Sequence record: ON529852.1
DNA: 64,000 nucleotides
Direction: 5' to 3' (one strand)
The position numbers and the translations under genes were made by a program. Numbering within the stretch: the first letter of the stretch is position 1; each line of letters starts with the position of its first letter. Below the pieces are notes generated by a model. It worked only from the letters and a program-made list of their open reading frames with translations. It had not been told where the DNA came from and did not search any database. Below are positions 16,922-23,782 of this stretch, piece after piece.

Positions 16922-17002
16922 TGGCGGGGACGGAGGGAATCGAACCCCCTGGATGACGCCTTCGGAGGGCGTTGCCTACATTCCGGTCGGCACTTCGCCC
17001 CC
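16922..17002 (-). tRNA. tRNA-Arg(CCG), atypical D arm
   Basis: GGGGGCG/CGTCCCC acceptor, ACGCC-CTCCGAA-GGCGT, GGTTCGATTCC, CCA. Confidence 0.8.
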
Positions 17003-17035: not shown

Positions 17036-17117
17036 TGGCGCCCAAGGCAGGATTTGAACCTGCGTTTGCAACTCCGCTACGGATAAGGCCTTCGTAGGAC
17101 CCCTCGGTTACTTGGGC
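17036..17117 (-). tRNA. tRNA-Arg(ACG)-like, no D stem, branched variable region
   Basis: GCCCAAG/CTTGGGC acceptor, GGGTC-CTACGAA-GGCCT, T arm GCAGG-TTCAAAT-CCTGC, CCA. Confidence 0.6.
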
Positions 17118-17120
17118 ATT

Positions 17121-17204
17121 TGGCTCCTATGAGAGGACTCGAACCTCTAAGTCTTGCGACGGTCGATTAACAGTCGACTGCGTTTACCATTCCGCCACAT
17201 AGGA
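17121..17204 (-). tRNA. tRNA-Asn(GTT) with long variable arm
   Basis: GTCGA-CTGTTAA-TCGAC; variable hairpin GTC-GCAA-GAC; CCA. Confidence 0.9.
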
Positions 17205-18552: not shown

Positions 18553-18815
18553 CAGGCGCGGTTCGGCGGCGTATACGGCATGGGGCGCAGCCGAGGCTCG
18601 GCGCGCGGATGACTGATTCCGGTCGGCATGATGTTCAATTGCAGCCCGGCGCCCCGACGCAGCAGCATCATGAGATCATGGGCGCGCACCGCCTCGGCCG
18701 GCGCGGCGAATGTCAGTTCGATCAGCACGCGATTGCTGTCGGTGCTGCACGCGGTCGCGATCTGGTCAGGCTCCAGGTCCAGAGCCTGCGTGGGACTGAT
18801 GTTGAGCCGGCTCAT
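18552..18815 (-). CDS. Hypothetical protein (87 aa, MSRLNISP...)
   Basis: ATGA overlap with def stop; only the 3' part of the listed 316-aa ORF is plausible. Confidence 0.6.
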   Translation of the reverse strand: MSRLNISPTQALDLEPDQIATACSTDSNRVLIELTFAAPAEAVRAHDLMMLLRRGAGLQLNIMPTGISHPRAEPRLRPMPYTPPNRA

Positions 18816-19354
18816 GCGCGTGTCATCCGACGCACGTTGTCCTGGTGCTTCTTCAGCAGCATCGCCCGCTTCAGCGACGAGACCCGGTCGATGTTGCGCA
18901 CCCCGTCCAGGTGGTCCATCTCGTGCTGAAGGCAGATGGCCTTGTAACCCTTGCCCGACACGGTCTGCATACGGCCGTGAATGTCCTGGTATTCGACCGT
19001 CACTTCCCGATGCCGTCGCACGCGGAAAAAGACGCCCGGCATGGACAGGCATCCCTCCGGCATCTCGATCATGTCCTCGGACTTGTCGATGAACGTGGGG
19101 TTGATCAGGATCAGTTTGGGGCGATCGACCATGACGTCTTGCACCGGCAGTCCGGTGTCGGGCAGGTCGATCATGGTGAAGATGCGCAAGGGCACGCCGA
19201 CCTGAACGGCGGCGAGCCCCGCGCCCTCGGCCATCAACATGGTGTCGACCATGTCGAAGCAAAGCGCCCGCACCTCGTCGGTGATCTCGAAGACCGTATC
19301 GGAGGGCTTCGTCATCAAGGCGTCGGTGCAGGGAATGATCTGACGCAGGGACAT
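18812..19354 (-). CDS. def: Peptide deformylase
   Basis: GAGLAAVQVG, EGCLS and HEMDH motifs. Confidence 0.97.
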   Translation of the reverse strand: MSLRQIIPCTDALMTKPSDTVFEITDEVRALCFDMVDTMLMAEGAGLAAVQVGVPLRIFTMIDLPDTGLPVQDVMVDRPKLILINPTFIDKSEDMIEMPEGCLSMPGVFFRVRRHREVTVEYQDIHGRMQTVSGKGYKAICLQHEMDHLDGVRNIDRVSSLKRAMLLKKHQDNVRRMTRA

Positions 19355-22390: not shown

Positions 22391-22397
22391 GGGGTGT

Positions 22398-22482
22398 TGG
22401 CGGTGCGCCAGGGAATCGAACCCTCAACCTTGCGGTCGGCGACGGTTTTCAAGGCCGCTTGTCCCCATGGACGCTGCGCACC
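22398..22482 (-). tRNA. tRNA-Ser(TGA)
   Basis: Loop CTTGAAA; class II; CCA. Confidence 0.9.
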
Positions 22483-22487
22483 GAAGG

Positions 22488-22578
22488 TGGCGGACGGCAC
22501 GCGATTCGAACGCGTGGGACCCAGGGGGTCCGCCTGCCTTCCAAGCAGGTGCCTTAAGCCGGGCTCAGCCAGCCGTCC
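22488..22578 (-). tRNA. tRNA-Ser(GGA)
   Basis: CCTGC-TTGGAAG-GCAGG; class II; CCA. Confidence 0.92.
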
Positions 22579-22583
22579 GGTGT

Positions 22584-22801
22584 TGGTGGAGGCGAGGGGA
22601 TTCGAACCCCCGTAGACGCCGAACCCTCGCATTACCAAGGGCCGATCTCAGGTTTAGAACGCGTGTGCCGCCCTGACCATCTTCCGCAGGCCAGGGGGTC
22701 TATCGTAACGACCCCGTCGATCGGTTGCCTCTGCGTCCCGGATTTACCCGGACCGTTGCTCTGTTCCACGGTGCTCATGCCGAAACCCGAGCGACGCCCC
22801 C
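22584..22801 (-). ncRNA. ssrA: Compact one-piece tmRNA
   Basis: 5' GGGGGCG pairs with 3' CGCCTCC-ACCA giving G3.U70; GGGTTTCGGC D-loop analog; T arm GGGGG-TTCGAAT-CCCCT; internal GCA-start frame 22734..22654. Confidence 0.8.
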
Positions 22802-22810
22802 GTGAAGATA

Positions 22811-22898
22811 TGGAGGATGGTGTGGGATTCGAACCCACGGAACCTTGCGGTCCACCGGTTTTCGAAACCGGCGCGATCGGCCTCTCCGCCAACCATCC
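22811..22898 (-). tRNA. tRNA-Ser(CGA)
   Basis: CCGGT-TTCGAAA-ACCGG; class II; CCA. Confidence 0.93.
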
Positions 22899-23127: not shown

Positions 23128-23198
23128 TGGTGGAGACAGTGGGGCTCGAACCCACCAAGGCTTCCTTGCAAAGGATGCCTGCGCCCTGCGCTGTCCCC
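23128..23198 (-). tRNA. tRNA-Ala(TGC), 3-nt D loop
   Basis: G3.U70; loop TTTGCAA; D arm GCGC-AGG-GCGC. Confidence 0.88.
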
Positions 23199-23691: not shown

Positions 23692-23782
23692 TGGTGAACG
23701 TGGTCGGACTCGCACCGACGATGAAGGTTGTAACCTAACGGGATTAAGAGCCCCGGCCTCTCGCTACTGAGGTGACACGTCC
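23692..23782 (-). tRNA. tRNA-Lys(CTT) with long variable arm
   Basis: CGGGG-CTCTTAA-TCCCG; variable AGGT-TACA-ACCT; T loop TGCGAGT. Confidence 0.85.

What the first reader, a model, noticed from the sequence alone, without database searches (positions are those of the whole stretch)
22584..22801. Miniature one-piece tmRNA inside a tRNA array of an alphaproteobacterial phage
SEEN: an alanine-identity acceptor (G3.U70), tmRNA-type D-loop analog and T arm in only 218 nt. A GCA-initiated frame (22734..22654) reads AEATDRRGRYDRPPGLRKMVRAAHAF*. KNOWN: alphaproteobacterial tmRNA is circularly permuted and two-piece, typical tmRNAs are about 350 nt, and the Caulobacter tag ends in AA for ClpXP. INFERENCE: it was acquired from a different lineage and streamlined. 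The basic, non-AA-ending tag may free stalled ribosomes without sending phage proteins for degradation. It sits under the attenuator, so it would be induced when ribosomes stall.
Basis: partly seen in the sequence, partly recalled or inferred. Interest (0 to 1): 0.7.

Follow-up and report, generated by a model that had tools for sequence, protein, structure and literature searches.

The report
Alanine tRNA-like RNA with tmRNA-like arm
A giant Brevundimonas phage carries, inside its tRNA gene array, a conserved 218-base RNA gene that looks like an alanine tRNA with a 137-base folded domain grafted where tmRNA carries its long arm. It is a real and apparently undescribed RNA, but not the miniature tmRNA with a 27-residue tag that was proposed.

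Summary
The window is Brevundimonas phage vB_BpoS-Kabachok (ON529852.1). At 22584..22801(-) there is a real 218-nt RNA gene. It has a perfect 7-bp acceptor stem with G3.U70, A73, an encoded CCA and a canonical T arm. It lies 9 nt and 5 nt from the flanking tRNA-Ser genes. Homologues occur in seven Brevundimonas phages (312-357 kb) and in two unrelated uncultured phage contigs (543 and 607 kb), always in tRNA arrays.

Covariation supports nine helices: 13 pairs with compensatory changes against 3.0 +/- 1.4 in shuffles. These include a true D stem and a hairpin at the anticodon-arm position, both of which canonical tmRNA lacks.

ARAGORN finds no tmRNA. Rfam tmRNA scores 24-32 bits against a threshold of 47, and aligns only the acceptor and T arm. 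Only UUC-UAA, inside an invariant GUUCUAAACC, is shared.

My best reading (confidence about 0.4) is an alanine-charged, ribosome-directed tmRNA analogue that ends translation with little or no tag. A tRNA-scaffolded RNA with another role is nearly as likely. The gene is unannotated, and I found no description of this architecture.

The parts
22584..22801 (-). Whole RNA gene, 218 nt. RNA position n corresponds to window coordinate 22802 - n. In the record ON529852.1 it is 270584..270801.
   Evidence: Model R1 scores 272 bits here and 163-275 bits in eight other loci. GenBank does not annotate it.
22795..22801 (-). Acceptor stem, 5' strand GGGGGCG (n1-7), with G3 of the G3.U70 pair.
   Evidence: All 7 pairs are invariant in all 9 sequences.
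22584..22594 (-). Acceptor stem 3' strand CGCCUCC (n208-214), discriminator A (n215) and encoded CCA (n216-218).
22773..22792 (-). D arm (n10-29). The stem is 10-13/26-29; the loop carries UCGGCA (a G18 G19 N A21-like motif).
   Evidence: Two compensatory pairs in the 543-kb relative.
22753..22771 (-). HP1, a hairpin at the anticodon-arm position (n31-49). Its loop holds an invariant GAACAG followed by two purines, and has no U33.
   Evidence: Two compensatory pairs in the 607-kb relative and G-C to G.U in Gurke. ARAGORN draws the spliced core as a cloverleaf only at 90% threshold.
22737..22752 (-). HP2 (n50-65), a short hairpin like a class II variable arm, with loop GUAAAW.
   Evidence: One compensatory pair (G-C to A-U) and one single change.
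22729..22737 (-). H2, 5' strand (n65-73). It pairs with n179-187 and closes the inserted domain.
   Evidence: Three pairs with changes on both sides. The registers are listed.
22615..22623 (-). H2, 3' strand (n179-187). A 3-nt linker follows, then the T arm.
22719..22724 (-). H3, 5' strand (n78-83).
   Evidence: CCGAUC/GAUCGG here, UGGAUUU/AAGUCCA and UGGAA/UUUCA in the two relatives. Three compensatory pairs.
22642..22647 (-). H3, 3' strand (n155-160).
22703..22715 (-). Conserved block GGGG-N-CGUU-N-CGA (n87-99). Rfam's alternative 5' end falls here.
   Evidence: Conserved in all three lineages. Several candidate tertiary pairings exist, none proven.
22673..22694 (-). HP4 (n108-129), the central hairpin.
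   Evidence: A 6-bp stem here and an 11-bp stem of unrelated sequence at the same place in the 607-kb relative.
22651..22660 (-). Invariant GUUCUAAACC (n142-151).
   Evidence: Identical in all 9 sequences. Mostly unpaired in the minimum-free-energy folds.
22624..22641 (-). HP3 (n161-178), with the invariant loop motif GGUAAUGC.
   Evidence: Stepwise U-A, U.G, C-G change among the Brevundimonas phages. Two U.U mismatches in the distant relatives.
22595..22611 (-). T arm (n191-207): GGGGG-UUCGAAU-CCCCU.
   Evidence: One compensatory pair in the 607-kb relative.
22654..22734 (-). It is not a conserved feature.
   Evidence: the frame is interrupted in the 607-kb relative and the peptide is unrelated in the 543-kb relative.

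Best explanation
It is a genuine, previously unannotated stable-RNA gene, co-transcribed and processed with the phage's tRNAs.

Shown: its body is an alanine-tRNA-like cloverleaf. It has an invariant acceptor stem with G3.U70 and A73-CCA, a true D arm and a canonical T arm. A hairpin with a non-decoding loop sits where the anticodon arm belongs. A short hairpin plus a 123-nt multi-helix domain replace the variable loop. That is the site where tmRNA's H2 helix emerges.

Inferred: the RNA is charged with alanine by the host AlaRS, carried by EF-Tu, and acts on ribosomes as a minimal analogue of tmRNA. It would accept the stalled peptide on its alanine and then present the invariant UAA (in GUUCUAAACC) for release. 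The ribosome would be freed with no tag or a very short one, so no ClpXP-type degradation signal. Whether host SmpB is needed is open, because the D stem and the anticodon-like hairpin occupy the place SmpB takes on tmRNA.
For: Real gene and fold:
- 95-100% identity in seven phages, plus two homologues at 72-77% identity in unrelated 543-kb and 607-kb phage contigs, all in tRNA arrays.
- 13 compensatory pairs against 3.0 +/- 1.4 in shuffles (0 of 500) and 1-3 in the slid controls. The helices were checked base by base.

Alanine identity:
- All seven acceptor pairs, G3.U70 included, and A73-CCA are invariant, while seven of the other eight helices show compensatory changes. This argues for sequence-specific recognition of the acceptor rather than mere pairing.
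- The best-scoring ordinary tRNA against the family model is a phage tRNA-Ala (34 bits). The D stem, position 26 and the T arm resemble that tRNA-Ala.

tmRNA-like topology:
- The large domain emerges at the variable-arm site, as H2 does in tmRNA.
- Rfam's best family for all three lineages is tmRNA, though below threshold.

Termination idea:
- UUC-UAA lies in a 10-nt invariant, mostly unpaired motif. The 24 nt before the UAA carry no insertion or deletion in any lineage.

Context:
- Huge phages are known to carry tmRNA and other translation genes (PMC7162821).
- A peptide deformylase gene lies about 3 kb away.
- From my own knowledge: phage growth is reported to need tmRNA's ribosome release rather than its proteolysis tag.
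Against: - No expression, charging or ribosome data exist. The one RNA-library run holding the locus looks like low-depth DNA of a Gurke-like phage.
- The D stem and anticodon-like hairpin sit where SmpB binds tmRNA, so the canonical entry mechanism may not apply. No phage SmpB was found.
- No conserved ORF beyond UUC-UAA.
- No demonstrable PK1 or pseudoknot ring.
- ARAGORN and Rfam do not call it tmRNA.
- Two GUAA-containing hexaloops and several invariant single-stranded blocks suggest a compact tertiary fold rather than a template. The UAA may be structural.
Confidence: 0.4

Rival explanations
1. A tRNA-scaffolded structured RNA whose business end is the 137-nt inserted region. It would work as a protein-binding, regulatory or catalytic RNA. 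The tRNA-like ends would serve only for RNase P and 3' processing and for stability, like the stable RNAs of unknown function that I recall in phage T4's tRNA cluster. Alanine identity would be inherited from a tRNA-Ala ancestor, or used for a non-ribosomal alanine transfer.
For: - Invariant loop motifs GUAAAW and GGUAAUGC, and the blocks GGGG-N-CGUU and GUUCUAAACC, point to tertiary contacts and a compact fold.
- No conserved ORF.
- The anticodon-position loop cannot decode normally, because it has no U33.
- The phage's own tRNAs tolerate insertions at the variable region: tRNA-Asn and a tRNA-Lys-like gene.
Against: - The complete invariance of all seven acceptor pairs, G3.U70 and A73 across lineages that covary elsewhere is hard to explain if only processing mattered.
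- The T stem stays tRNA-Ala-like.
- No Rfam family other than tmRNA or tRNA matches the insert.
Confidence: 0.3
2. A decoy that blocks host trans-translation or another host factor. As an uncharged or charged alanine tRNA mimic it would titrate SmpB, AlaRS, EF-Tu or a host tRNA-targeting defence. This is what was proposed for the TLD-only molecule of mycobacteriophage DS6A.
For: - There is a precedent: DS6A carries little more than a TLD, and a similar molecule strongly inhibits tmRNA, perhaps by titrating SmpB (PMC4131195).
- The acceptor and T arm are tmRNA/tRNA-Ala-like.
- The phage has no SmpB of its own.
Against: - The D stem and anticodon-like hairpin occupy the SmpB site.
- A decoy would not need a conserved 137-nt domain with invariant motifs.
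Confidence: 0.15
3. One reading: a streamlined canonical one-piece tmRNA that appends the 27-residue tag AEATDRRGRYDRPPGLRKMVRAAHAF.
For: - The frame is open in Kabachok.
- Two of its three variable sites among the Brevundimonas phages are synonymous third positions.
Against: - The frame is cut by UGA eight codons before the stop in the 607-kb relative. The peptide is unrelated in the 543-kb relative.
- The proposed resume codon lies inside the covarying helix H2.
- ARAGORN and Rfam give negative results.
- The D stem is present.
Confidence: 0.03
4. A tRNA-Ala gene interrupted by an intron or mobile insertion, or a decaying pseudogene.
For: - The body resembles tRNA-Ala.
- ARAGORN's intron mode at 80% threshold gives full-length calls.
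Against: - Those calls disagree on the anticodon between lineages.
- No group I intron or other ribozyme match.
- Removing the insert does not restore a normal anticodon loop.
- The insert is the most motif-rich part and is under covariation-type selection in three lineages.
Confidence: 0.04

Closest known systems
One-piece tmRNA (SsrA; Rfam RF00023)
   Same: Acceptor stem with G3.U70, A73 and CCA. Canonical T arm. A long helix (H2) leaves the tRNA-like part at the variable-arm site and closes a large internal domain holding a stop codon in a conserved single-stranded stretch. Phage-encoded examples exist.
   Different: 215-219 nt, against the 230-400 nt quoted for tmRNA. It keeps a real D stem and a hairpin at the anticodon-arm position, and has an extra short hairpin before H2. 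No pseudoknot ring or PK1 could be shown. No conserved tag frame. Below Rfam's threshold and invisible to ARAGORN.
TLD-only tmRNA relic of mycobacteriophage DS6A
   Same: A phage-borne, alanine-type tRNA-like molecule that lacks a normal tag template (PMC4131195).
   Different: DS6A is described as little more than the TLD. This RNA carries a conserved, covarying 137-nt inserted region and full D and anticodon-like arms.
tRNA-Ala and class II (long-variable-arm) tRNAs (RF00005)
   Same: Cloverleaf core. The D stem GCUC/GAGC, position 26 and the T arm resemble the phage tRNA-Ala. HP2 sits where a class II variable arm does. It is processed from a tRNA array.
   Different: The loop at the anticodon position (GAACAG plus two purines, no U33) cannot be a normal anticodon loop. 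A 123-nt domain follows the variable-arm-like hairpin. ARAGORN does not call it, and Rfam lists no tRNA match for it.
Two-piece (permuted) tmRNA of Alphaproteobacteria (RF04321)
   Same: This is the host clade's form of tmRNA. The T arm and acceptor 3' strand match weakly (14-25 bits).
   Different: Here the 5' and 3' acceptor strands are in normal order on one 218-nt transcript, so there is no permutation. Scores are far below the gathering score of 47.
Stable RNAs of unknown function in phage T4's tRNA cluster (from my own knowledge, not tested here)
   Same: Non-tRNA stable RNAs encoded within and processed from a phage tRNA array.
   Different: No sequence relation was tested. Alanine identity and tmRNA-like topology are not features I can attribute to them.

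Membership tests
tmRNA (RF00023) | Acceptor stem with G3.U70, ending in CCA, alanine identity | tested here: met
   Seven invariant pairs including G3.U70, then A73 and CCA. Actual charging was not tested.
tmRNA (RF00023) | tRNA-like T stem-loop | tested here: met
   GGGGG-UUCGAAU-CCCCU, with one compensatory pair in the 607-kb relative.
tmRNA (RF00023) | Reduced D-loop without a stem (PMC3968760) | tested here: not met
   A 4-bp D stem with two compensatory changes, 100% paired.
tmRNA (RF00023) | No anticodon arm; SmpB occupies the place of the D and anticodon stems | tested here: not met
   Hairpin HP1 follows the D arm after one nucleotide. It has two compensatory pairs.
tmRNA (RF00023) | Long helix H2 leaving at the variable-arm position and closing the rest of the molecule | tested here: met
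   H2 (n65-73 with n179-187) covaries in all lineages and ends 3 nt before the T stem. An extra hairpin, HP2, precedes it.
tmRNA (RF00023) | PK1 upstream of the template, and a ring of pseudoknots | tested here: inconclusive
   Only short candidate pairings between invariant blocks, expected by chance at about this rate. No room for PK2-PK4 in 218 nt.
tmRNA (RF00023) | Conserved tag reading frame with a resume codon and a stop codon | tested here: not met
   The 27-codon frame is broken or unrelated in the relatives. Only UUC-UAA is shared, and at most 8 codons are open in all three lineages.
tmRNA (RF00023) | Reaches Rfam's gathering score / is detected by ARAGORN | tested here: not met
   32.1, 28.4 and 24.4 bits against 47. 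ARAGORN finds none at the default or at 80% thresholds.
tmRNA (RF00023) | SmpB binding and tagging of nonstop products | not testable with these tools
   Needs biochemistry. No SmpB gene was found in any Brevundimonas or Caulobacter phage record.
Permuted two-piece tmRNA (RF04321) | Acceptor piece upstream of the coding piece in the gene | tested here: not met
   Normal 5'-to-3' order. What follows the CCA is a 5-nt spacer and then tRNA-Ser. Scores of 14-25 bits against 47.
tRNA (RF00005) | Cloverleaf with a 7-nt anticodon loop carrying U33, and a variable region of normal size | tested here: not met
   ARAGORN does not call it, and the Rfam gathering-mode scan lists no tRNA match for it. The loop is GAACAG plus two purines. 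The spliced core passes ARAGORN only at 90% threshold.
TLD-only phage tmRNA relic (DS6A type) | Little more than the tRNA-like domain | tested here: not met
   A conserved, covarying 137-nt inserted region is present.

The most novel reading that the evidence does not exclude
An SmpB-independent, self-contained rescue RNA. The RNA hairpin at the anticodon position would replace SmpB's body. Its invariant loop (GAAC, or AG plus two purines) would pair in cis with the invariant GUUC(U) just before UAA. After alanine transfer and translocation the A site would then see a stop codon directly: a tmRNA analogue with a zero-length tag. This could represent a tRNA-to-tmRNA intermediate form. The loop-to-GUUC complementarity exists in all lineages (4 bp, and 6 bp in the 607-kb relative). 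Both partners are invariant, so there is no covariation test, and a 4-bp match is about what chance predicts.
Probability: 0.08. Interest if true: 0.95.

Novelty: new variant of a known kind. Interest (0 to 1): 0.66.

Why it matters
tmRNA is thought to descend from an alanine tRNA, and its helix H2 mimics a long variable arm. Until now the known forms lack the D stem and anticodon arm and depend on SmpB to fill that space. An alanine-identity RNA that keeps both arms and also carries a tmRNA-like domain would be new in one of two ways. It could be a new way for a virus to act on stalled ribosomes, releasing its proteins without marking them for degradation. Or it could be a new class of tRNA-scaffolded phage RNA. 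Either way, it shows that the standard tools used to annotate huge phages miss a conserved stable RNA. It also gives a compact, tractable object for testing what the minimal requirements of trans-translation are.

Tried and rejected
1. ARAGORN tmRNA mode at default, 80% and 60% thresholds, and intron mode. Nothing at the default or 80% in tmRNA mode; the 60% tmRNA calls and the intron-mode calls were inconsistent.

2. Rfam at gathering and E-value thresholds on all three lineages. Only sub-threshold tmRNA matches over the acceptor and T arm, and no ribozyme, intron or riboswitch.

3. Rfam's alternative 132-nt reading with a 5' end at 22715. Rejected: it needs a U.C mismatch in the acceptor, the 607-kb relative has no such end, and the 218-nt form has a perfect stem and covarying helices.

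4. Searches for more members.
- Five IMG/VR pattern scans, one metagenome scan and one GTDB genome scan. These gave only the two uncultured contigs (one of them seen twice). Two chance hits lay inside actinobacterial coding sequence.
- BLAST of all three versions against 50,697 phage records found only the seven Brevundimonas phages.

5. A T-arm-like hit in Caulobacter phage CcrPW. It led to repeated tRNA-like units in the spacer upstream of a 1,410-nt gene; in CcrColossus the corresponding gene is a TROVE (Ro60-like) gene. They are probably Y-RNA-like and unrelated to this element.

6. Expression. One RNA-library run holds the locus, but as low-depth, Gurke-like contigs that also cover coding DNA. 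It is uninformative.

7. Second frame ending at UGG-UAA in the GGUAAUGC loop. It is open in all lineages, but open frames of that length are expected at this GC content. It also mixes non-homologous frames, and the W becomes R in some phages.

8. Tertiary pairings between invariant blocks. There are several 4-bp candidates, and none is testable by covariation.

9. Mechanical ORFs across the element. They run through tRNA genes and are not genes.

Full report
**Identity of the window.** The stretch 22391-22812 is 100% identical to Brevundimonas phage vB_BpoS-Kabachok (ON529852.1, 356,285 bp, Dolichocephalovirinae, host B. pondensis LVF1). Window coordinate = record coordinate - 248,000. The record annotates tRNA-Ser genes on either side of the finding but nothing at 22584-22801. 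The genome paper states that ARAGORN detected no tmRNAs in these phages (PMC10070969).

**The observation.**
- Read on the minus strand, the element starts GGGGGCG at 22801 and ends CGCCUCC-A-CCA at 22584.
- That gives a perfect seven-pair acceptor stem with G3.U70, discriminator A and an encoded CCA, next to a T arm GGGGG-UUCGAAU-CCCCU.
- It lies 9 nt downstream of tRNA-Ser(CGA) and 5 nt upstream of tRNA-Ser(GGA), in a long minus-strand tRNA array.
- ARAGORN reports no tmRNA in the window or the sub-region. Rfam at gathering thresholds reports only tRNAs.
- With permissive thresholds Rfam gives tmRNA RF00023 at 32.1 bits (gathering score 47), for a 132-nt alternative starting at 22715. That alignment uses only the acceptor and T arm and needs an acceptor mismatch.

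**Relatives.**
- Seven Brevundimonas phages of 312-357 kb carry the element at the same place, with 98% mean column identity. The 207-kb relative Bajun matched only over a flanking tRNA-Ser gene, and no Caulobacter phage record matched at all.
- A pattern scan of IMG/VR found two diverged homologues. One is at L009 3022-3240(-) on a 543-kb contig (also found as a JGI metagenome contig). The other is at L008 9668-9882(-) on a 607-kb contig. Both are inside tRNA arrays.
- BLAST confirms 76-77% and 72-73% identity to the Brevundimonas versions over the full length.
- Proteins near them (an AspRS, and a 418-aa protein with no Pfam family) have no relatives in Brevundimonas or Caulobacter phages. 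The three lineages are therefore not close kin.
- Scans built on internal motifs rather than on the acceptor stem found no further members in IMG/VR or the metagenome set.
- A scan of 185,579 bacterial and archaeal genomes with the 5' motif gave only two chance hits inside actinobacterial coding sequence.
- A covariance model built from the nine sequences finds one copy per genome (163-275 bits). Ordinary tRNAs score 20-34 bits, and the best of them is a phage tRNA-Ala.

**Structure.** Base-by-base checking in each lineage and a formal count on the model-fitted alignment support nine helices. RNA position n corresponds to window coordinate 22802 - n.

| Helix | Positions (n) |
|---|---|
| Acceptor | 1-7 / 208-214 |
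| D stem | 10-13 / 26-29 |
| HP1 | 31-35 / 44-49 |
| HP2 | 51-54 / 61-64 |
| H2 | 65-73 / 179-187 |
| H3 | 78-83 / 155-160 |
| HP4 | 108-113 / 124-129 |
| HP3 | 161-166 / 173-178 |
| T stem | 191-195 / 207-203 |

- Overall, 96.1% of cells are paired. Thirteen pairs change on both sides, against 3.0 +/- 1.4 in column shuffles (0 of 500) and 1-3 when partners are slid.
- The alignment was fitted to the model, which favours the structure. The hand check is independent of that.
- The D stem has two compensatory changes, HP1 two, HP2 one, H2 three, H3 three, HP3 one and the T stem one.
- HP4 is an 11-bp stem of unrelated sequence at the same place in the 607-kb relative.
- By contrast, all seven acceptor pairs are invariant.
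- Invariant unpaired motifs are UCGGCA in the D loop, GAACAG in the HP1 loop, GUAAA in the HP2 loop, GGGG-N-CGUU, GUUCUAAACC, and GGUAAUGC in the HP3 loop.

**What this anatomy means.**
- The molecule is a complete cloverleaf-like body, not a tmRNA TLD. It has a real D arm and a hairpin exactly where the anticodon arm belongs.
- The body resembles the phages' own tRNA-Ala: the same D stem GCUC/GAGC, A at position 26, CC opening the next stem, and the same T arm apart from the first stem base and one loop base.
- The loop at the anticodon position lacks U33. It is either an 8-nt loop closed by a covarying pair or a 7-nt AACAGRR loop, so normal decoding is unlikely. When the insert is removed in silico, ARAGORN draws a cloverleaf only at 90% of its threshold, and disagrees on the anticodon between phages.
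- The variable loop is replaced by a short hairpin plus a 123-nt three-way-junction domain.
[quoted passage not shown] It also states that SmpB sits where the D and anticodon stems of a tRNA are, and that H2 mimics a long variable arm (PMC3968760).
- The element therefore shares tmRNA's alanine acceptor, T arm and H2-like topology. It fails two defining negatives (no D stem, no anticodon arm), and it also fails the Rfam and ARAGORN tests.

**The proposed tag.**
- In the frame ending at the conserved UAA, Kabachok reads ...AEATDRRGRYDRPPGLRKMVRAAHAF*. The 543-kb relative reads an unrelated peptide ending ...GHPKF*. The 607-kb relative has an in-frame UGA that leaves only MVYGETLF*.
- The proposed GCA resume codon lies inside the covarying helix H2.
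- Among the Brevundimonas phages the frame holds three variable sites, two of them synonymous third positions. That is too few to mean anything.
- What is shared is UUC-UAA within GUUCUAAACC, and an indel-free 24 nt before it. Those 24 nt read MVRAAHAF, AVSGHPKF and MVYGETLF, with only V and F in common.
- A second frame ending at UGG-UAA in the HP3 loop is open in all lineages. It is not homologous along its length, and frames of that length are expected at this GC content.
- So a long tag is refuted as a conserved feature. A tag of at most eight residues, or none, remains possible.

**Other claims.**
- A simple scan finds no promoter-like or terminator-like site next to the element. The one terminator-like hit nearby lies inside tRNA-His. 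The 'attenuator' link is therefore unsupported, and the tight spacing argues for co-transcription with the array.
- No SmpB homologue was detected in any Brevundimonas or Caulobacter phage record, using E. coli SmpB as the tblastn query.
- The only RNA-library run holding the locus contains low-depth contigs. They carry Gurke-type differences and also cover coding DNA, so they say nothing about expression.

**Mechanism.**
- Shown: a conserved, structured, tRNA-array-embedded RNA with invariant alanine identity elements.
- Inferred: charging by AlaRS. The invariance of every acceptor pair, in lineages whose other helices covary freely, is the main argument.
- Inferred: EF-Tu delivery, from the tRNA-Ala-like T stem.
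- Beyond that, I favour a ribosome-directed role as a minimal tmRNA analogue that ends translation at the invariant UAA after alanine transfer (confidence about 0.4).
- A tRNA-scaffolded RNA with a different function is nearly as likely (0.3). The GUAA-type loops and invariant blocks suggest a compact fold.
- A DS6A-like decoy (PMC4131195) is possible (0.15), but does not explain the conserved insert.
- The boldest reading has the hairpin loop pairing in cis with GUUC to place UAA in the A site without SmpB. The complementarity exists in all lineages, but it is only 4 bp between invariant motifs. That is about what chance predicts, so I give it 0.08.

**Novelty.** I found no annotation, Rfam family or paper describing this architecture. 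Huge phages are known to carry tmRNAs detected by ARAGORN (PMC7162821), and this element is missed by that tool. I rate it a new variant of a known kind (tRNA-like / tmRNA-like RNAs), of real interest to people working on trans-translation and on phage translation takeover.

Noticed in passing
window 22398-22483 (-): A tRNA-Ser(UGA)-like gene that ARAGORN misses in Kabachok. Rfam's best match is tRNA-Sec at 34.6 bits, below threshold. The same gene is annotated as tRNA-Ser in phage Domovoi. With it, the cluster holds four serine tRNAs (GCU, UGA, GGA, CGA).
   Followed up: partly
window 23695-23782 (-): An unannotated tRNA-like gene: Rfam tRNA 38.6 bits, above the gathering score. Its anticodon loop CUCUUAA gives Lys CUU. 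It has an unusual 15-nt variable-arm insertion for a class I tRNA. Gurke and Kikimora annotate an 87-nt tRNA-Lys in the same part of the array.
   Followed up: partly
window 16925-17002 (-) and 17039-17117 (-): Two more unannotated tRNA-like genes, each Rfam tRNA 32.1 bits. The first has anticodon loop CUCCGAA (Arg CCG). The published count of 24 tRNAs for this phage is therefore probably too low.
   Followed up: partly
window 23128-23198 (-): Kabachok's tRNA-Ala(UGC) is only 71 nt and has an aberrant D region. Gurke and Kikimora carry a canonical 76-nt tRNA-Ala at the same place.
   Followed up: no
window 17121-17204 (-): tRNA-Asn(GUU) carries an 11-nt insertion in its variable region. Insertions at this site seem to be tolerated in several tRNAs of this phage.
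   Followed up: no
L013 2600-3760 (Caulobacter phage CcrPW MH588545.1, about 116,000-117,300); the corresponding CcrColossus spacer is about L014 18460-19840: An unannotated spacer of about 1.1 kb in CcrPW holds repeated tRNA-like units (GGTGGCGTAG...TACTTCG...GGTTCGA[AG]TCC) alternating with tRNA-5'-half-like pieces. ARAGORN finds no tRNA there. The spacer lies just upstream of a 1,410-nt gene; in CcrColossus the gene in the corresponding position is annotated as a TROVE (Ro60-like) gene. The units are probably Y-RNA-like (YrlA-type) tRNA mimics.
   Followed up: partly
window 18812-19354 (-): A phage peptide deformylase gene (KABACHOK_04220) lies between two blocks of the tRNA array. It is another translation-related function in the same region.
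   Followed up: no
L009 11200-13068 (-): The 543-kb uncultured phage contig encodes a full-length aspartyl-tRNA synthetase about 8 kb from its copy of the element, within a dense tRNA array.
   Followed up: partly
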